A stretch of 64,000 nucleotides of DNA, taken from positions 1-64,000 of IMG/VR virus record IMGVR_UViG_3300010334_000023; one strand, written 5' to 3'. Of the stretch, positions 54,262 through 61,575 are shown one piece after another. Position numbers and translations under genes: made by a program. The notes under the pieces were generated by a model, which saw only the letters and a list, made by a program, of their open reading frames with translations, did not search any database and was not told the origin of the DNA. How positions within the stretch are numbered: position 1 is the stretch's first letter; every line of letters begins with the position of its first letter.

Positions 54262-54729
54262 ATGAACATTACCCTAGACTCAGATGCCATGCGCGAGCTG
54301 ATGAGACGCCTTGCTGTGGTCAATGAAGCTGACGACAATCCCAGCATATTGAATAACGAACCTCAGACAGACAACGCTGTGCCCGATGATGGCAACAGCG
54401 AAGCCATGCCAGCTGAACCAGAAACAGGCAGCGAGGATCAAACCAAAGATGATAGCGAGATCACTGACGTGATGACTGAACCACGCAGCGATAAATCTGC
54501 GAAATTCAGCGTGGGTAGCCTAGCAGGTGATCTTGGCATACAAAACACAGAACTATTCAAAGCTGCTTTCAATCAGCTGCGCAGCGGAACCGAGCCAACT
54601 GATCAAGATCAGATCAAAGAGCTGGCTGCAGCATTTACCAAGTTAATGAGCACAGACACCAGCACTGCTCAGAAAGTTGTGAACCGCCTGCGCTCTATCT
54701 ACAATCGCCCTGTGAAAGCTAGCGCCTAA
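54262..54729 (+). CDS. acidic hypothetical protein
   Basis: TAAATA and AAGGA upstream. Confidence 0.7.
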   Translation: MNITLDSDAMRELMRRLAVVNEADDNPSILNNEPQTDNAVPDDGNSEAMPAEPETGSEDQTKDDSEITDVMTEPRSDKSAKFSVGSLAGDLGIQNTELFKAAFNQLRSGTEPTDQDQIKELAAAFTKLMSTDTSTAQKVVNRLRSIYNRPVKASA

Positions 54730-56164
54730 TAAGGCTGGTCAAGCTGCTGAGCTGTCCTAGGCTCTTGCTGACATCTACCTGAGGTCTTGCAGCACCAGGA
54801 GTGTCTGTCATGCCCTTGGGCGGAGGATTTAGATTCTTCCTGCGCAGATCATTGAACACGTCAGCACCAGCTCCGCCGCCACCCTGCAGCATGTTCTGCT
54901 GTTCCTCATCTAAGTCAAAAATCTTCAGCGTGTTCTGATCAAAGCCCAGATAGACTTTGCTGCCAACACCGCTAGAACTGCGTGTTTTTAGAAACTGTAT
55001 CTGATACTGTCCGCGCTCTTTCATTGCCGCGCTGGCAAAGATGGATATCACGTTATCAGCTGTCTGGATCTTGGAGATACCACCACTGATCATGCTGTGA
55101 TCATGTTCCTGTTCCTGCGTGGCACTTCTGTTCAACTGACTGGCTGTCACACAGACCATGTTGCGTTCAACCGCAAGTCCACGAAGTTCTTCAGTGACAA
55201 ACTTGTCCTTGATGAACAGGTCACTGGGATTGATCTTCTTGTTGTTGGGATAGAGCAGATCCAAGTAATCCACTACGATCACGTCACAGCGTTTCTGCGT
55301 TTCAATCTCATAGTTCTTGAGATAGGCTTTGATATCGTTCACAGTGCTACCCTGTGGTAGCTGTCGTACATGTAACAGCCCACTCTTGCGCTGTGCTGCT
55401 TTGACCTTGAGCTCAACCGTGTCTAGATTGCGGAAGATCTCTTTGCTACCAACCTCAGTGAGCATGCTATCCATGCGCATGGATGTGAGCTCTTCACTAA
55501 GTTCTAGCGTGATGTATACCACGTTCAGACCCTGCTTGACCATGTTCAAGCTCATGTTCTGCAGGAACAAGCTCTTGCCCACACCAGAACCTGCGCACCA
55601 GATGGTTATCTCACCTCTGTTGATGCCACCATACAGCTTGTCATCCACAGTCTTCCAACCAGTGGTACACTGCCCATTCTTGTCCTTGATCTTCAGCAAT
55701 CTGGCGCGCGGATCTTCAAAGTAGTTGGTACCGAGATCGCTCTGCAGGCTGACCAATATGGCTTCCCTGACCAGCTTCTCTACTTCGCCATAGTTGCCCT
55801 TGTCTATGAGATCAGCACTGCTCAGCACCGCGTCTGCCAGTGCTCTGTTCTTGCAGAACCCTTCAATCTCATCCAAGAACGCATCCTGATGTCCAGGACT
55901 GATGTCACCTATGTGTGCGAAATCCAGCCCAGTCTCGGCATTGACCTGTTCTATCTTAGGAAGCACACGATATTCTTCTGCGTGCTTGACCATGTAGCGC
56001 ACAGCTGGTCGCAGCTTGTTAATGAAGTACTTGGGATTGACGATGTTCACACAGCGCGTGAAGATGTCTTCGCTGCTTAACAGCACGTTGATCAGCAGCT
56101 TCTGCTTGTCTTCGTTGTAGTCAGTGACAGTCTCTTGCTCTTCGTTACCAAATCTATCAGCCAT
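54719..56164 (-). CDS. replicative DnaB/gp41-like helicase
   Basis: AGSGVGKS, YITLEL, VVDYLD, TASQLNR, KTR. Confidence 0.92.
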   Translation of the reverse strand: MADRFGNEEQETVTDYNEDKQKLLINVLLSSEDIFTRCVNIVNPKYFINKLRPAVRYMVKHAEEYRVLPKIEQVNAETGLDFAHIGDISPGHQDAFLDEIEGFCKNRALADAVLSSADLIDKGNYGEVEKLVREAILVSLQSDLGTNYFEDPRARLLKIKDKNGQCTTGWKTVDDKLYGGINRGEITIWCAGSGVGKSLFLQNMSLNMVKQGLNVVYITLELSEELTSMRMDSMLTEVGSKEIFRNLDTVELKVKAAQRKSGLLHVRQLPQGSTVNDIKAYLKNYEIETQKRCDVIVVDYLDLLYPNNKKINPSDLFIKDKFVTEELRGLAVERNMVCVTASQLNRSATQEQEHDHSMISGGISKIQTADNVISIFASAAMKERGQYQIQFLKTRSSSGVGSKVYLGFDQNTLKIFDLDEEQQNMLQGGGGAGADVFNDLRRKNLNPPPKGMTDTPGAARPQVDVSKSLGQLSSLTSLIRR

Positions 56165-56507
56165 TTATATCCATCCTCACGATGTCATCTTCCGCACAGT
56201 CAGTTCCATACTGTATCTCTATCATGCGCAGTTCTTGGTCACTGGTATTGCAGAGCTGATGCCAAGATTCTCTGTGTATCCACAAGTGTTGATGTCTACC
56301 AAAAACCCCAACTAGTTCTGAGTTGTTGCTGTCATTTAAGCTGTACACAGTGGCTTGCCCATGAGACACGAACCAAAGCTCAGATCGCAGAGCATGTTTC
56401 TGCATGCTCAGTCGCTTGCCAGGTTCCACTACTAGTTCCTTGAGCTTGACCCCACAACCGTCAGTGTGCAGAACCGTGTAATGTCCCCATGTTCTGTCAA
56501 CCCTCAT
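56157..56507 (-). CDS. mannose-6-phosphate isomerase type II C-terminal cupin
   Basis: R.WG.Y, V.PG..LS.QKH..RSE.W, IEIQ.G....EDDI.R. Confidence 0.85.
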   Translation of the reverse strand: MRVDRTWGHYTVLHTDGCGVKLKELVVEPGKRLSMQKHALRSELWFVSHGQATVYSLNDSNNSELVGVFGRHQHLWIHRESWHQLCNTSDQELRMIEIQYGTDCAEDDIVRMDING

Positions 56508-57523
56508 CTAAACATCTTCCTCTTGGTACCAATCTGCAGTGCGCTCTGCGTCTTGCTGTCTATTATTGTACGCAGGGTAAACAGTTTTCCATAGCGGCAA
56601 CTGGCATCTGCTGCGTCTTTTATGTCGTCTTCCCAGTCAGGAAAGCTCACGCTCCAACCCTGGTCAAGAGCCACGTCTATCAGACCTTGGTTATTCTTCT
56701 GCCTGTCTGGTACCACTATGATCTCACGGTCTGTGCTGTTGAGCCAGCTTAGCTGCTGCTTGCTGAGCTTGCTGCCCAGTGCTGCCACACCATCTACAGC
56801 AATAGCATCAAATGGTCCCTCAACTAGTATGATGTATTTACGAGTGCCTTTGGTTATGGCATCACAGTTGAAAAGATAGCCAGTCTGTAGATCGCTGTTG
56901 TAATATCTAGGTGTCCCACTGGGAGGTGTGCCAGCATATCTGGCAGTCCAACCCACTATCTTGTCACGATAGTAGAAAGGTATGATGATGCGCTGATCCA
57001 AGTTCCACTTGGTACTGGGCGTCCAATGATAGTCCCAGCCCTCACCAACTGCTGTGCCTCTGCTGATCAGATACTCCACGCAGACACCAAACTCTGCGCT
57101 GAGGTCATCATCTTCCATGATTGTTTGGATGGGCCTTGCGTTTTCTGGCAGTGACACTTCCTTGAAGTCATGCAGGAAGTTTAGCTCGTTGTGATCATTC
57201 ACGGTAGTCACACCGTTGAGCTTGTTCTGCAGGACTTCCAGCTTGACCTTACGTATGTCCTCGCTGGGCATGCCCATCCAGTCCATGAGGTTCTCAAAAT
57301 TCCTGCTGATGTTGACGTTGTCAAACACAGTCTTGAAACCACAGTTGTAGCAGTTATAGGCTATGTGTCCGTCTGGTAGTATCAGCATGTTACCACGCAT
57401 GCGCGTGTCGTGCTTATGTCCGCGATGGCTGCAGCAAGGTGCGTTGAACATCAACCAGCCGCGCGGACTGGTCTTGCGCTTCTGTGGTAGGTTTTCAGCT
57501 ACTAATTGATGCATCAGGGCCAT
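56504..57523 (-). CDS. DNA primase (gp61-like)
   Basis: PCC.H...YNCYNCG Zn motif, RIIIPF, G.TAR, VEGPFDA, PD.......G, KD. Confidence 0.9.
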   Translation of the reverse strand: MALMHQLVAENLPQKRKTSPRGWLMFNAPCCSHRGHKHDTRMRGNMLILPDGHIAYNCYNCGFKTVFDNVNISRNFENLMDWMGMPSEDIRKVKLEVLQNKLNGVTTVNDHNELNFLHDFKEVSLPENARPIQTIMEDDDLSAEFGVCVEYLISRGTAVGEGWDYHWTPSTKWNLDQRIIIPFYYRDKIVGWTARYAGTPPSGTPRYYNSDLQTGYLFNCDAITKGTRKYIILVEGPFDAIAVDGVAALGSKLSKQQLSWLNSTDREIIVVPDRQKNNQGLIDVALDQGWSVSFPDWEDDIKDAADASCRYGKLFTLRTIIDSKTQSALQIGTKRKMFR

Positions 57524-58508: not shown

Positions 58509-58880
58509 ATGTCAGATACCAAACAGGTGCTACAGGAAAAATTCCCGTTCCTCACTGTTATCAGCCATCTAGACAGGGAATATCTTGGCATAGTTCAGCA
58601 CGCAGACAACGCATTCGTGCATCTCTACGTGATGGACAACACCTTCAACGATCCCATGAAGCGAGAGTTCCTAGATTGCGGTGAGATATGGTGGTGGGAA
58701 AGCAACCGCCAGATACCAATCAACATGTTTATTAAGGACAGGTTCGCCAAGTTCAAGAGCTGCTTGCGCATATTCAGCATGAAAGAAACAGTGATACTAC
58801 AGGGACCTGTGCTGAATCTCAAGGATCTCATGAACAAGCGAGTGAAGCGCAGGACCATACAGCTGGTCAAGCACGCTTAG
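58509..58880 (+). CDS. hypothetical protein (FPFL...EYLGIVQ...WWWESNR.IPIN.F)
   Basis: Late promoter and RBS. Confidence 0.75.
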   Translation: MSDTKQVLQEKFPFLTVISHLDREYLGIVQHADNAFVHLYVMDNTFNDPMKREFLDCGEIWWWESNRQIPINMFIKDRFAKFKSCLRIFSMKETVILQGPVLNLKDLMNKRVKRRTIQLVKHA

Positions 58881-59350
58881 TCTCCCAGCGTGGTTACCGT
58901 AACCCTAGCACGGATACGACCATCCTTGGTCACATGAACCTTGAGAGGCTTGTTAGCTGCCTTGCGTGCCTTGGCATCAGCTTTTTCCTTGTCGTCGTCC
59001 CACTTCTCAAACTCGTTGTGACTGAACGCAAACATGGTAGCATCGCCTGCTTCTGCGATTCGCACATAGCTGATGAGCTGAGAATCCTTGTTTTCTTCAC
59101 GCTCTACTTCGGTCCATACGTTAACGGCACCAGTGAAACTCTCTACCGTGTCCCATATGGTAGCAATCAACTCAGGTGTGGCTTTTGGATTGCGGAACAG
59201 ATAGCCTTTCTTGAGCTTGGTGTTCAGCTTGGCAATGGGATCATATTGTAGATCGGTTCCAGCATTGAGGATCTCATCGCCATCGATGATCTGAACTGAT
59301 TTGCCGAACATATCGCCAATTACCTGGAATGCTAGCTTGGTACGTGCCAT
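58877..59350 (-). CDS. hypothetical early protein
   Basis: GAGGAG RBS and promoter. Confidence 0.75.
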   Translation of the reverse strand: MARTKLAFQVIGDMFGKSVQIIDGDEILNAGTDLQYDPIAKLNTKLKKGYLFRNPKATPELIATIWDTVESFTGAVNVWTEVEREENKDSQLISYVRIAEAGDATMFAFSHNEFEKWDDDKEKADAKARKAANKPLKVHVTKDGRIRARVTVTTLGD

Positions 59351-59370
59351 GTGAGTGCTCCTCTGATTGC

Positions 59371-59402
59371 TTATACTAGCACAGATCTGCGTCATGTCAA
59401 GG
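59371..59402 (-). promoter_or_regulatory. sigma70-type early promoter (CTTGACA...GTGCTAGTAT)
   Basis: Repeated motif. Confidence 0.75.
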
Positions 59403-59492
59403 TGAAAATAACAGATCATATGCTATCACACCTGCGATGCAGATCACAGGAATCAGCACACCTGGTGTAGCCAACACTCGTAACCAGATCAT
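59397..59492 (-). CDS. 31-aa membrane peptide
   Basis: Translated by hand; ATGA overlap with the upstream gene. Confidence 0.45.
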   Translation of the reverse strand: MIWLRVLATPGVLIPVICIAGVIAYDLLFSP

Positions 59493-60076
59493 AGCCTGGC
59501 CTCTAACAGTAGATTAGCGTGTACATACACCAAAACTGCGTATGAAATCGCGTGTGCCTTCTTGAAGCTGTAGGTATCCTCATCAGATTTGGTCCAGATC
59601 GAGTCTGCGATGCTGTGAAATCCCTGTGTTTCACATTTGGTTTGTAAATGCTTCTTGCCTGGGCGGATCAGCGCCAAGATCATGGCGATGTGTTCAATGC
59701 TGGTTGGACGCAATCTAGCACAGAGGTCGCCATAGTTGCCCAAATGGAACAGCTTAGCCACGAAGCTTGGATCTGTAAACACTACCCAATCCAGCGGGCG
59801 TTCCATGAGATCTCTGAGATGCGCTTCATCACGCACATGCTCATAAACGCCAACGTTTAGCATGTCTATCTTGAAGAATCCTCGATCTTCTGCGGCATTG
59901 TAGTCCAAGCTAGACAACCCAGTGATTGGATCCTTGGGCACAGCATGGAAGTACACACCCGTGTTATGTCGAGCGATCTTGCCATCTCTGATGATGCTGG
60001 CAGGTGTGTGCCAGAGGCCAGACAGTGCCTGTTCTCTGTTCGCAAAATCTATGTCAATGTCGCCGCGGTTTAACAT
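59489..60076 (-). CDS. miniature DnaE-like (family C DNA polymerase) catalytic protein
   Basis: DIDIDF, H..GVY, KIDML, LFHL, ALIRPG, YSFKKAHA.SYA in DnaE order. Confidence 0.8.
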   Translation of the reverse strand: MLNRGDIDIDFANREQALSGLWHTPASIIRDGKIARHNTGVYFHAVPKDPITGLSSLDYNAAEDRGFFKIDMLNVGVYEHVRDEAHLRDLMERPLDWVVFTDPSFVAKLFHLGNYGDLCARLRPTSIEHIAMILALIRPGKKHLQTKCETQGFHSIADSIWTKSDEDTYSFKKAHAISYAVLVYVHANLLLEARL

Positions 60077-60084
60077 TGCTAATC

Positions 60085-60384
60085 CTACTGCCTGTCAATC
60101 TTGCCGTCAAGCTGCCGTTGTAAAACACTCATCTCGGTCCTGCGCTGGCGCATGCTGTTGCCAAGCTGTCTCAGCTCATTGCGCATCTCAGATATCGTCT
60201 GTTCGCTCTGAATTAATCTTCTTTCAAGCTGCAGCACATAACCCGGATCGATGCTGCGTATCTTGGTGCCATCTATCTCAAACTCGGTTATAGCCCCCTG
60301 TGATACAATCGGTCTCTTGATATCAGCAGCAGCAATAGCTTCATCATCACTGGCACCGTACATGTCTGTGATCTCTGCCATCAT
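60085..60384 (-). CDS. coiled-coil hypothetical protein
   Basis: ATGA-coupled ORF. Confidence 0.65.
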   Translation of the reverse strand: MMAEITDMYGASDDEAIAAADIKRPIVSQGAITEFEIDGTKIRSIDPGYVLQLERRLIQSEQTISEMRNELRQLGNSMRQRRTEMSVLQRQLDGKIDRQ

Positions 60385-61091
60385 AGTCCTGCTTTCTTGA
60401 GAGTGTCCTTGACGAAGGTAGTGCTCTCTTTGTCTCTGTTGAACTTCAGCGACCACTGTGGTGCTGGTGCTATGCCTGCTATCATACCGATCTGCTCCGG
60501 TGAGCAACGCTTGAGCGCCGACTCTGCGCTGCTAGCATTATATAGCACCCAGGGGCTGATGCGACCTGTGGTCACCCAGCGTGTCATCTGGTTTGCGTTC
60601 ACTTCCCTGAAGAAGTCGTACCATGCCAGCTCATGCTGCTGTGCCCATTCTCGCATCAGCACGATGCCACGCTCCAGTGCCTGTTCTGGGCTTTCATTGC
60701 GTATGAGGTCCTTGACATATTCCTCATAGACCACGTCATGCGTCCACTTGTCAATGGGCAGATTATTCTTCAGCACGTAGTCTATGAAGCGTGCGGGTTC
60801 GGGTGCTGCTGTGTCCAGCAGATGCCTAGCAAACTTGCTGAATGCCAGATAGTACTTGCTGTCTATGAATTCCTTGTAGGTCTTCTTGTGCTTCTTGCCA
60901 GCCACAGCACTGTTCATCTCATAGAAGCGCGACCAGGCCATGAAGGCTATGCGGCCCTGAGGTTGGTCCTTCTGAAACCACCGCCGCTTCTTCTCACACA
61001 CATGATTGATCAACCTCAGCTCGTCGCTGAATTCTTTCTTACAGAACTCACAGCGGCACTGCTTAGGAATCACGCTCCAGCTTTTTGCCAT
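60381..61091 (-). CDS. Zn-finger (CxxC...H.C) protein in the replication cluster
   Basis: CEFCKKEF......H.C; GRISPW. Confidence 0.7.
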   Translation of the reverse strand: MAKSWSVIPKQCRCEFCKKEFSDELRLINHVCEKKRRWFQKDQPQGRIAFMAWSRFYEMNSAVAGKKHKKTYKEFIDSKYYLAFSKFARHLLDTAAPEPARFIDYVLKNNLPIDKWTHDVVYEEYVKDLIRNESPEQALERGIVLMREWAQQHELAWYDFFREVNANQMTRWVTTGRISPWVLYNASSAESALKRCSPEQIGMIAGIAPAPQWSLKFNRDKESTTFVKDTLKKAGL

Positions 61092-61575
61092 CCTCGACCA
61101 ATTCTTTCAGTTCGCTGTCACTCAATCCGGCATCCTTGCCCAGCTGGCGCAGGCTTTCTTTGTCCAGCTGCGATTTCAGCAAGCTCAGTTCTTCTGCGTT
61201 GATGCTAGGGTATAGGCCCAGCAGGAACTCGTCAACCACCTTGGTCTTGCTCTTGGCGTTCTTGGCACCCACGTAGGGCCTGTACTGCTTGCGCCCTGTG
61301 CCAGCCAAGCACATCAGCTTGTGCTGCAGCTCTGGATGCTTGCCCAAGCTGAAGAATCCCAGGTTCACCAAGTCGTTGGTTGCCAGCACGGCATAGCTCT
61401 GCATGGGGCTCTGTGGGCTGAGGCTGCTCATGTAGCGCATCAGCAAGAATGGACTGTAGCCCTTGCGTTCCTCGTCAGTGAGGCGTTCATAGAAACCAAA
61501 GTCTCGGTTATCCAGCGCCTGTAGCACTGCGTCCAAGCTCAGCTTCTGCCCCTGTGTGTTTGCTTTCTTTGCCAT
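61063..61575 (-). CDS. putative clamp-loader small subunit (gp62-like)
   Basis: YSPFLLMRYMS resembles the gp62 motif; replication context. Confidence 0.5.
   Translation of the reverse strand: MAKKANTQGQKLSLDAVLQALDNRDFGFYERLTDEERKGYSPFLLMRYMSSLSPQSPMQSYAVLATNDLVNLGFFSLGKHPELQHKLMCLAGTGRKQYRPYVGAKNAKSKTKVVDEFLLGLYPSINAEELSLLKSQLDKESLRQLGKDAGLSDSELKELVEDGKKLERDS

What the first reader, a model, noticed from the sequence alone, without database searches (positions are those of the whole stretch)
59489..60076. A 195-aa DnaE: catalytic core kept through internal deletions
Seen: DIDIDF, H..GV, KIDML, LFHL, ALIRPG and YSFKKAHA.SYA in DnaE order within 195 aa, with a clean start and stop. Known: in DnaE these motifs, including the three catalytic Asp, span several hundred residues of a protein over 1000 aa. 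Inference: this is not a truncation but a miniaturised family C polymerase lacking PHP, OB and much of the thumb and fingers. Neighbouring genes (coiled-coil, Zn-finger, gp62-like) may supply missing parts in trans, or it may be a primer or repair nucleotidyltransferase.
Basis: partly seen in the sequence, partly recalled or inferred. Interest (0 to 1): 0.75.

Follow-up and report, generated by a model that had tools for sequence, protein, structure and literature searches.

The report
Half of a split mini-DnaE
This 195-residue phage protein is a real, conserved relative of the bacterial replicative polymerase DnaE, but it is only the metal- and template-binding half of a two-gene "minimal Pol III" described in giant phages in 2021, so this copy is a new member of a known, biochemically untested family.

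Summary
It is under strong purifying selection (dN/dS 0.06-0.09). Its confident model (pLDDT 89.6) matches only family C polymerases (Z up to 10.3, next unrelated 3.7). D6/D8 align with E. coli DnaE D401/D403 and K69/D71 with K553/D555; all are invariant.

It is not a self-sufficient miniature DnaE. It begins exactly at the D-x-D strand and lacks the NTP-binding G-R-G-S half of the palm. In every near-complete relative that half is a separate ~173-aa protein (phrog_11127, Pfam PF07733) encoded 31-274 kb away, alongside a family B polymerase.

A cognate pair is predicted to bind (score 0.88, best control 0.00). Rare natural 375-aa fusions join the two halves in DnaE order.

This split minimal Pol III alpha of "group 2.2" jumbo phages was described computationally by Iyer et al. 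2021 (PMC7824862). PHROGs (phrog_11778) and GenBank already annotate it.

The window's record is a 216-kb fragment (about 42% of the genome). The partner and PolB are absent from it, as expected for a fragment.

The conserved neighbours do not resemble missing DnaE domains. Verdict: new member of a known kind; activity untested.

The parts
59489..60076 (-). Gene for the C-terminal (Mg2+- and template-binding) unit of the split minimal Pol III alpha; 195 aa, stop codon at 59489-59491
   Evidence: ORF and translation; phrog_11778 E 1.2e-59; own profile E 3e-100, the only hit in the 216-kb record; AF2 model pLDDT 89.6; family C polymerase fold, Z up to 10.3
60047..60061 (-). Codons for D6-I-D8-I-D10, the first metal-binding strand; D6/D8/D10 align with E. 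coli DnaE D401/D403/D405
   Evidence: Invariant in 47 and 63 homologs; alignment to 2hnh/5lew; E. coli residues checked on the MG1655 sequence
59864..59872 (-). Codons for K69-I-D71 (KIDML strand), aligned with E. coli K553-F-D555, the third catalytic carboxylate
   Evidence: K69 and D71 invariant; Mtb DnaE1 alignment 'LLKMDFLG'; E. coli D555 context VKFDFLGL. D58 of 'SLDY' is not conserved
59657..59674 (-). Codons for A135-LIRPG140, a fingers motif equal to E. coli ALFRPG (to residue 641)
   Evidence: I137, R138, P139 invariant; aligned to E. coli 597-641
59537..59572 (-). Codons for Y169-SFKKAHAISYA180, a fingers motif equal to E. coli YGFNKSHSAAYA (751-767)
   Evidence: H175 invariant; aligned to E. 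coli 751-767; phrog_405 (1190-aa DnaE) positions 762-809
60083..60086 (-). AGGA Shine-Dalgarno-like sequence 6 nt before the ATG, overlapping the upstream gene's TAG stop
   Evidence: Read directly from the sequence
60381..61091 (-). Context: 236-aa C2H2/C2HC zinc-finger plus helical protein (phrog_11058), same operon, always linked to the C-unit; function unknown
   Evidence: 42/42 loci; phrog_11058 E 4e-66; zinc finger only; model pLDDT 90.7 with no structural relative
61063..61575 (-). Context: 170-aa protein (phrog_11758), first gene of the conserved block; possibly a gp62-like clamp-loader subunit (unconfirmed)
   Evidence: 41/42 loci; atlas lead to PF16790; not confirmed by HMMs
56504..57523 (-). 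Context: DnaG/T4 gp61-type primase (zinc finger plus Toprim)
   Evidence: phrog_47 E 8e-35; next to the C-unit in 35/42 loci; same order in phage Phosso
54719..56164 (-). Context: DnaB-like replicative helicase
   Evidence: phrog_19 E 1.8e-70; same order in Phosso

Best explanation
The ORF encodes the C-terminal subunit of a two-chain, roughly 370-residue 'minimal Pol III alpha' typical of T4-related ('group 2.2') jumbo phages. It supplies all three metal-binding carboxylates (D6, D8, D71), the adjacent lysine (K69) and a pared-down fingers core (RPG and KxHA motifs). It lacks the other half of the Pol-beta-type nucleotidyltransferase palm. That half is the G-R-G-S triphosphate-binding loop and its helices, made as a separate ~173-aa protein (phrog_11127) from a gene tens to hundreds of kb away, beside the clamp-loader genes. 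The two chains are inferred to assemble non-covalently (there is no intein) and rebuild one active site, so neither is catalytic alone. The enzyme most likely acts as a DNA-templated polymerase auxiliary to the phage's family B replicase, in repair, one strand or a special step; that last part is inferred, not shown. In this window the gene sits in a tight same-strand operon next to primase and DnaB helicase. Its partner is not in the 216-kb fragment held.
For: Family membership:
- phrog_11778 E 1.2e-59.
- 96 jumbo-phage records at 31-49% identity, all about 190 aa.
- At least 585 IMG/VR loci and 568 clusters at 50% identity.

Functional constraint:
- 80/80 homologs are intact and start 2-12 aa before DxDxD.
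- dN/dS is 0.064-0.093 against the nearest relatives, median 0.136.
- D6, D8, D10, K69, D71, R138, H175 are invariant.

DnaE homology:
- Foldseek's top 15 PDB hits are all Pol III alpha.
- An independent aligner gives Z 10.3 (Taq 458-837), 9.8 (Mtb DnaE1), 8.4 (PolC) and 8.3 (E. coli 397-781), then 3.7.
- Residue map checked on E. coli DnaE.

Partner:
- Atu_ph07 ASV44743.1 is phrog_11127 and matches PF07733 at 36.7 bits, above the cut-off.
- The N-unit profile aligns to E. coli 322-392 at E 6e-9 and ends where the C-unit begins.
- There are 396 N-unit clusters of about 173 aa, with invariant WGVGRGSSVxS.
- Both units and PolB are present in every near-complete relative: G001 (100% complete), G002 and Phosso.
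- Genus tallies for the two units in 'phages' match almost exactly.

Assembly:
- Complex prediction on the cognate G001 pair scored 0.88; best of 3 controls 0.00. The mark was reached by 58 of 80 solved complexes and 2 of 110 mismatched pairs.
- The predicted interface joins N-unit 130-147 (G-R-G-S loop) to C-unit 6-15 (DxDxD strand).
- Natural single-chain fusions of 375-376 aa run N then C.

Prior description: Iyer et al. 2021, PMC7824862.
Against: - The partner gene and PolB are not in this phage's held record. The record is about 42% complete, so absence cannot be distinguished from loss.
- No biochemical evidence exists for any member. Polymerase activity, template dependence and heterodimer formation are all inferred.
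- The complex score may partly reflect the model's memory of intramolecular DnaE contacts (caveat).
- The enzyme has no thumb, clamp-binding motif or exonuclease, which is unusual for a processive templated polymerase.
- Sequence similarity to DnaE is weak (E 0.009). Homology rests mainly on structure prediction plus motifs.
Confidence: 0.72

Rival explanations
1. The two-chain enzyme exists but is not a DNA-templated replicative or repair polymerase. It could be a non-templated or specialised nucleotidyltransferase (tailing, priming or protein-priming, or nucleotide-signal synthesis), or a non-catalytic replisome scaffold that keeps the fold.
For: There is no thumb, clamp-binding region, OB or exonuclease: the model covers only E. 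coli 397-781 with about half the residues. These phages already have a complete T4-type replisome with PolB, primase and DnaB. The Pol-beta-type fold is used by many non-polymerase nucleotidyltransferases (general knowledge).
Against: The retained fingers motifs (ALxRPG, YxFxKxHA) are invariant. In DnaE they lie in the template/dNTP-binding fingers, and a tailing enzyme or cyclase would not need them. All three carboxylates and the G-R-G-S loop are invariant, which argues against a mere scaffold. A DnaG-type primase is already present.
Confidence: 0.2
2. One reading: a self-sufficient miniaturised DnaE in one 195-aa chain, with adjacent genes (coiled-coil, Zn-finger, gp62-like) supplying missing parts in trans.
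For: All three catalytic Asp residues and two fingers motifs are in this chain. The Zn-finger and 170-aa neighbours are almost perfectly syntenic with it, 42/42 and 41/42 loci.
Against: The chain starts at the DxD strand and lacks the NTP-binding half of the palm. That half exists as a dedicated, co-occurring protein family and is fused to the C-unit in rare single-chain forms. The Zn-finger protein's confident model matches no DnaE domain. The coiled-coil ORF is present in only 8/42 loci.
Confidence: 0.05
3. A decaying remnant or pseudogene fragment of a full-length phage DnaE.
For: It matches only a fraction of DnaE, and curated DnaE models score far below their cut-offs (TIGR00594 18 bits against 434).
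Against: dN/dS is 0.06-0.14. Length is constant at 185-214 aa across hundreds of lineages. Catalytic residues are invariant and there are no frameshifts.
Confidence: 0.01

Closest known systems
Split minimal DNA Pol III alpha of group 2.2 jumbo phages, C-terminal unit (Iyer et al. 2021, Viruses 13:63, PMC7824862; phrog_11778; GenBank 'DnaE-like DNA polymerase III alpha', e.g. Sinorhizobium phage Phosso XYS97594.1)
   Same: Full-length profile match, same length and same start at the DxD strand. Same invariant residues. Same genome type (T4-like jumbo phage with DnaB and primase). Same synteny as Phosso.
   Different: Only 31-49% identical to any cultured-phage member; it comes from an uncultivated freshwater lineage. 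Its partner N-unit has not been recovered because the record is a fragment.
Bacterial replicative family C polymerases, DnaE / PolC (E. coli Pol III alpha 2HNH/5M1S, Taq 2HPI, Mtb DnaE1 5LEW, PolC 3F2B)
   Same: Pol-beta-type palm strands with the same three carboxylates and lysine. Fingers motifs RPG and KSHA. Co-linear structural alignment, Z 8-10.
   Different: 195 aa against 1160. No PHP, thumb, distal fingers, beta-clamp-binding region, HhH, OB or tau-binding domain. The NTP-binding half of the palm is on another polypeptide. It fails the curated DnaE thresholds.
Cyanobacterial split DnaE joined by a split intein (e.g. Synechocystis / Nostoc dnaE-n and dnaE-c; from general knowledge)
   Same: A family C polymerase encoded by two distant genes.
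   Different: There is no room for intein halves. The N-unit ends a few residues after FxEWL(K), and C-units start 2-12 residues before DxDxD. Assembly must therefore be non-covalent. The split site lies inside the palm rather than the fingers, and the protein is minimal rather than full-length.
Split family B polymerases of jumbo phages (chimallivirus split PolB, bioRxiv 2026, PMC13648687, seen; two-ORF PolB of Atu_ph07 gp276/gp277)
   Same: Precedent for phage replicases working as separately encoded pieces.
   Different: Unrelated fold (family B RRM-type palm). The pieces are adjacent genes rather than loci tens to hundreds of kb apart.

Membership tests
Split minimal Pol III alpha, C-terminal unit (phrog_11778; Iyer et al. 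2021) | End-to-end profile match at about 190 aa | tested here: met
   phrog_11778 E 1.2e-59, residues 3-194 on profile 5-195/197; E 7e-61 in the genome search
Split minimal Pol III alpha, C-terminal unit (phrog_11778; Iyer et al. 2021) | Polypeptide begins at the Mg2+-binding DxD strand, at the conserved split point | tested here: met
   The window protein starts 5 residues before D6. All 80 homologs start 2-12 residues before it. The N-unit profile ends at E. coli 392 and the C-unit starts at about 396-400
Split minimal Pol III alpha, C-terminal unit (phrog_11778; Iyer et al. 2021) | Catalytic carboxylates and template/dNTP-binding fingers motifs conserved | tested here: met
   D6, D8, D10, K69, D71, R138, P139, H175 invariant; mapped to E. 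coli D401/D403/D405, K553/D555
Split minimal Pol III alpha, C-terminal unit (phrog_11778; Iyer et al. 2021) | Separately encoded N-terminal NTP-binding unit (phrog_11127 / PF07733) in the same genome | tested here: inconclusive
   Absent from the 216-kb record, but the record is about 42% complete. Present at distant loci in G001 (100% complete), G002, Phosso and Atu_ph07
Split minimal Pol III alpha, C-terminal unit (phrog_11778; Iyer et al. 2021) | Accompanied by a family B polymerase in a T4-like (group 2.2) jumbo phage | tested here: inconclusive
   No PF00136 hit in the fragment; PolB present in all near-complete relatives. T4-type DnaB, primase and terminase are present in the record
Split minimal Pol III alpha, C-terminal unit (phrog_11778; Iyer et al. 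2021) | The two units assemble into one enzyme | tested here: met
   Prediction only, on the cognate G001 pair rather than the window protein. Score 0.88, best of 3 controls 0.00; the mark was reached by 58 of 80 solved complexes and 2 of 110 mismatched pairs. Natural fusions P0157/P0274/P0275 exist. Physical binding is not testable here
Canonical DnaE / PolC (family C replicative polymerase) | PHP domain at the N-terminus | tested here: not met
   The protein starts at the equivalent of E. coli about 396. The only PF02811 hit in the record is weak and antisense to the terminase gene
Canonical DnaE / PolC (family C replicative polymerase) | Complete palm including the G-S NTP-binding loop in one chain; curated model thresholds | tested here: not met
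   No PF07733 hit; PF17657 14 bits against 22; TIGR00594 18 bits against 434. The G-R-G-S loop is on the N-unit
Canonical DnaE / PolC (family C replicative polymerase) | Thumb, full fingers, beta-clamp-binding region and OB domains | tested here: not met
   195 residues align across E. coli 397-781 only. About 14 residues stand in for E. coli 420-510 (thumb), and nothing lies beyond about 781
Canonical DnaE / PolC (family C replicative polymerase) | Template-directed DNA polymerase activity | not testable with these tools
   No biochemical report was found in the searched library
Split-intein DnaE (cyanobacterial type) | Intein halves flanking the split site | tested here: not met
   Only 2-12 residues precede DxDxD in C-units, and N-units end right after FxEWLK. 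There is no space for intein fragments of about 100 and 35 aa (sizes from general knowledge)

The most novel reading that the evidence does not exclude
The roughly 370-residue two-chain enzyme could be an active, template-directed DNA polymerase, the smallest family C polymerase known. Its missing thumb and processivity functions might be supplied by the invariably co-located Zn-finger protein (phrog_11058) and the 170-aa, possibly gp62-like, protein (phrog_11758). That would make a modular second replicase tied to the primase-helicase and clamp-loader modules. The rare 375-aa single-chain forms would then be a ready-made minimal model of Pol III catalysis.
Probability: 0.12. Interest if true: 0.7.

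Novelty: new member of a known kind. Interest (0 to 1): 0.3.

Why it matters
Family C polymerases are the main bacterial replicases and a drug target, and they are normally over 1000 residues long. A natural, strongly conserved version stripped to about 370 residues in two chains marks the minimum needed for the fold. Iyer et al. suggested it may model an ancestral form.

For this window the practical gain is correct annotation: the gene is one half of a split enzyme, not a stand-alone mini-polymerase, and its partner should be sought in the missing part of the genome.

Three results here add modestly to the 2021 description:
- the scale of the family (hundreds of 50%-identity clusters, strong purifying selection);
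- a passing complex prediction, backed by natural single-chain fusions;
- each half lies in a different replisome gene module (C-unit with primase/DnaB and a Zn-finger protein; N-unit with Cpn10 and the clamp loader).

No member has been tested biochemically, so the function remains open.

Tried and rejected
1. PHP domain in the genome. The only hit (G000 75736-75957, E 0.001) lies antisense to the 528-aa terminase large subunit gene and is spurious.

2. N-unit, PolB and other DnaE pieces in the 216-kb record. None were found with a single sequence, PHROG/Pfam profiles, my own unfiltered six-frame HMMs, the fused protein or E. coli DnaE. This is uninformative because the record is a fragment.

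3. This phage's own partner on other contigs.
- The exact C-unit occurs on 21 lake-metagenome contigs, none longer than the record.
- Candidate N-units P0020 and P0049 come from other samples.
- No cognate was assigned, so the complex test used the G001 pair.

4. Near-identical DNA in the phage collection: none.

5. Zn-finger neighbour as a missing DnaE part or a gp59 helicase loader.
- The model is confident (pLDDT 90.7), but the best PDB Z is 5.2, Foldseek probability is at most 0.11, and Swiss-Prot models give TM below 0.25.
- Pfam finds only the C2H2/C2HC finger. Rejected for lack of support.

6. 170-aa neighbour as gp62-like. There is an atlas lead to PF16790. Only 1 of 43 orthologs touches it, at E 0.05, and there is no PDB hit. 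Left as a lead.

7. D58 ('SLDY') as the third catalytic Asp. Rejected: it is not conserved, and D71 aligns with E. coli D555.

8. Split-intein mechanism. Rejected because there is no room for inteins.

9. Transcription evidence. RNA-library contigs identical to the operon exist, one of them inside the gene, but DNA carry-over cannot be excluded, so this counts only as a hint.

10. Later literature on the split minimal Pol III: only the 2021 paper was found.

Full report
OBSERVATION

The window holds an ATG-to-TGA ORF of 195 codons at 59489-60076 on the minus strand. The start codon lies 8 nt after the upstream gene's stop, with an AGGA 6 nt upstream, so the gene is part of a tight same-strand operon. 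Public DNA runs show no indel or joint over the region.

WHAT GENOME THIS IS

The window is the first 64 kb of a 216,498-bp linear viral record that CheckV rates about 42% complete. The record encodes a terminase large subunit, a DnaB-like helicase (54719-56164) and a DnaG/gp61-type primase (56504-57523).

The nearest cultured relatives of the ORF are the 470-490-kb Sinorhizobium phage Phosso (49% identity) and Agrobacterium phage Atu_ph07 (41.5%). PA5oct/MIJ3-type, XacN1 and RaK2/121Q-type jumbo phages follow. The exact protein occurs on 21 contigs from freshwater lake metagenomes. This is therefore an uncultivated freshwater jumbo phage of the T4-related 'group 2.2' kind.

IS THE GENE FUNCTIONAL AND DnaE-LIKE? 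YES

- The protein matches phrog_11778 ('DNA polymerase', 197 positions) end to end at E 1.2e-59.
- Relatives occur in 96 phage records, all covering about 97% of the query. They also occur in at least 585 IMG/VR loci and in 568 clusters at 50% identity, nearly all 185-215 aa long.
- All 80 fetched homologs are intact ORFs that begin 2-12 residues before the DxDxD motif.
- dN/dS against the three nearest relatives is 0.064-0.093, and the median over 59 pairs is 0.136.
- Invariant residues include D6, D8, D10, K69, D71, R138, P139, K141 and H175.
- Sequence similarity to full-length DnaE is weak but co-linear. The family profile's best seven PDB hits are all Pol III alpha (best E 0.009), aligning DIDIDF, the K-x-D strand, ALxRPG and YxFxKSHA in order.
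- Structure is decisive. The AlphaFold2 model is confident (pLDDT 89.6, pTM 0.79). Foldseek's top 15 PDB matches are all Pol III alpha.
- A Foldseek-independent all-against-all aligner gives Z 10.3 (Taq Pol III alpha 458-837), 9.8 (Mtb DnaE1 416-807), 8.4 (PolC 968-1295) and 8.3 (E. coli 397-781). Each covers about 190 of 195 residues, and the next unrelated chain scores Z 3.7.
- AFDB and BFVD searches agree.

On the MG1655 DnaE sequence, D401, D403 and D405 lie in PDFDVDF and D555 in VKFDFLGL. The alignment pairs window D6/D8/D10 with 401/403/405. The K-x-D strand pairs K69/D71 with K553/D555. That D401, D403 and D555 are the catalytic residues comes from the literature on E. coli Pol III (Lamers et al. 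2006, cited within PMC7824862) and from general knowledge. D58 of 'SLDY', a tempting candidate, is not conserved.

WHAT IS MISSING, AND WHERE IT IS

The 195 residues span about 385 residues of E. coli DnaE (397-781):
- About 14 residues replace E. coli 420-510, the thumb region.
- About 25 residues replace E. coli 642-750.
- Nothing corresponds to PHP (1-270) or to anything beyond about 781.

More importantly, the chain starts at the DxD strand. It therefore lacks the N-terminal half of the Pol-beta-type palm, including the glycine/serine loop that binds the incoming nucleotide's triphosphate.

Iyer et al. 2021 (Viruses 13:63, PMC7824862) reported exactly this situation. Group 2.2 jumbo phages carry, beside a family B polymerase, 'a phage-specific minimal version' of Pol III alpha. 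[quoted passage not shown]

I verified the partner independently:
- Atu_ph07 ASV44743.1 (177 aa) ends in GVGRGSCVSSYILYIIGV...FSEFLE.
- It matches phrog_11127 at E 1.7e-70, and Pfam DNA_pol3_alpha (NTPase domain) at 36.7 bits, above the cut-off.
- A profile of 50 such proteins has an invariant W-G-V-G-R-G-S-S-V-x-S. It aligns to E. coli DnaE 322-392 (E 6e-9) and ends at FERFL392, a few residues before the point where the C-unit begins.
- The N-unit family is as large and as constant in length as the C-unit family: 396 clusters of about 173 aa, all with PF07733.

CO-OCCURRENCE

The two units hit near-identical sets of phage genomes. Each hits 96 records; four of the N-unit hits are full-length DnaE genes of Clostridium phages. 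Genus tallies match almost one for one.

Among relatives with long records, both units and PolB are present in G001 (452.8 kb, 100% complete), G002 (73%) and Phosso. They are absent only from the two fragments, G003 (35%) and this record (42%).

The genes lie 31-44 kb apart in RaK2-, CBB-, 121Q- and PA5oct-type phages, and 174-274 kb apart in Atu_ph07, Phosso, G001 and G002 (coordinates).

In this record I found no N-unit, PolB or other DnaE piece by any method, including an unfiltered six-frame HMM search. If gene order follows Atu_ph07 (C-unit at 58 kb, N-unit at 241 kb), the partner would fall beyond the record's end at 216 kb. That last point is an inference.

DO THE HALVES WORK TOGETHER?

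Two lines of evidence say they do.

1. Complex prediction on the cognate pair from G001, using my alignments, gave a score of 0.88 in all three runs; the best of 3 controls was 0.00. That mark was reached by 58 of 80 solved complexes and 2 of 110 mismatched pairs. The predicted interface places N-unit residues 130-147 (the G-R-G-S loop) against C-unit residues 6-15 (the DxDxD strand) and the neighbouring strands. The tool's caveat applies: the score may reflect memory of intramolecular DnaE contacts, and it shows likeness rather than binding.

2. Rosetta-stone fusions exist. P0157 (375 aa) has an N-unit at residues 6-182 (hhalign probability 99.6%, E 3e-24), a short linker and a full C-unit at 189-372. 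Two further fused proteins of 376 aa (81% and 78% identical) come from independent assemblies. They are known only from short scaffolds.

No intein can be involved, because there is no room at either end.

MECHANISM (INFERRED)

In Pol-beta-type nucleotidyltransferases the G-S loop and the carboxylate strands together form one active site (general knowledge of the superfamily). Cutting between them, as here, should leave neither half active alone.

The C-unit would contribute the metal ligands, K69 and the minimal fingers. The N-unit would contribute triphosphate binding.

Retention of invariant fingers motifs argues for template-directed synthesis. The lack of a thumb, clamp-binding region and proofreading domain argues for a short-patch or auxiliary role beside PolB, as Iyer et al. 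also suggested. I put about 0.7 on 'obligate two-chain, template-directed polymerase' and about 0.2 on 'two-chain enzyme with another nucleotidyl-transfer or non-catalytic role'.

THE NEIGHBOURS

Among 42 related loci with at least 2.5 kb on both sides of the C-unit:
- 236-aa Zn-finger protein (phrog_11058): 42/42.
- 170-aa protein (phrog_11758): 41/42.
- Opposite-strand 123-aa ORF (phrog_11637): 40/42.
- Primase: 35/42.
- Coiled-coil ORF upstream: 8/42.

The Zn-finger protein folds confidently (pLDDT 90.7). It has no convincing structural relative and no resemblance to any DnaE domain or to T4 gp59; only its C2H2/C2HC finger is recognisable.

The 170-aa protein has an embedding-based lead to the gp62 clamp-loader family, which HMM searches do not confirm.

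The idea that neighbours supply missing DnaE parts is therefore unsupported. The tight linkage itself remains unexplained and is worth testing. Elsewhere, the N-unit lies in its own conserved block: an overlapping upstream 185-227-aa ORF, the N-unit, a ~131-aa ORF, Cpn10 and a clamp-loader AAA+ protein.

EXPRESSION

A lake metatranscriptome library holds short contigs identical to the operon, one of them inside the gene at 59723-59907. DNA carry-over is not excluded, so this is only a hint.

VERDICT

It is wrong in treating the protein as a complete core helped by its neighbours.

The gene is the C-terminal half of a known, computationally described split minimal Pol III alpha, which PHROGs and several GenBank records already annotate. 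It is a new, divergent member from an uncultivated freshwater jumbo phage. No member of the family has been characterised biochemically in the literature I could search, so the function remains an open and testable question.

Noticed in passing
P0157, P0274, P0275 (L129:1066-2193 for P0157): Natural single-chain fusions (375-376 aa) of the N-unit and C-unit of the minimal Pol III alpha, joined by a short linker in DnaE order. The three proteins are 78-81% identical to each other and come from independent assemblies, but are known only from short scaffolds. I did not see them mentioned in the passages of Iyer et al. 2021 that I read.
   Followed up: partly
window 60381-61091 (-), 61063-61575 (-), 58509-58880 (+): Three genes of unknown function accompany the C-unit in 42/42, 41/42 and 40/42 related loci: a 236-aa C2H2/C2HC Zn-finger helical protein (phrog_11058), a 170-aa protein (phrog_11758) and an opposite-strand 123-aa protein (phrog_11637). 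The Zn-finger protein has a confident model but no structural relative. The 170-aa protein has a weak lead to the gp62 clamp-loader family.
   Followed up: partly
L109:3343-8334; L119-L128; L088:846-2019; L003:1148-2232: The N-unit gene sits in its own conserved block: an upstream 185-227-aa ORF that overlaps its start, the N-unit, a ~131-aa ORF, Cpn10/GroES and a gp44-like clamp-loader AAA+ protein. The two halves of the enzyme are thus embedded in different replisome modules (clamp loader versus primase-helicase).
   Followed up: partly
L002:16878-19847 (Atu_ph07 gp276/gp277); G001 294678-297558 (L093, L095): The family B polymerase of these relatives is also encoded in two separate ORFs (for example 565 + 417 aa in Atu_ph07, and 755- and 351-aa frames in G001). 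Split replicases seem to be a habit of this phage group.
   Followed up: no
window 56157-56507 (-): A 116-aa cupin-like ORF (phrog_7851, 'cysteine dioxygenase', E 1e-5) is wedged between the DnaB helicase and primase genes. It was found only in the closest relatives (3 of 81 loci).
   Followed up: no
G000 75736-75957 (+) = L001: A weak PHP-domain hit lies on the strand opposite the 528-aa terminase large subunit gene. It is an antisense artefact, not a DnaE PHP remnant.
   Followed up: yes
Escherichia phage CMSTMSU MH494197.1 260417-260701: In this one jumbo phage the C-unit match covers only residues 32-124 (48%). The gene may be disrupted or interrupted there.
   Followed up: no
window 59003-61575: A lake-water metatranscriptome library contains short contigs 100% identical to several genes of the operon, including the C-unit gene (59723-59907). 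This hints at expression in nature, but DNA carry-over is not excluded.
   Followed up: partly
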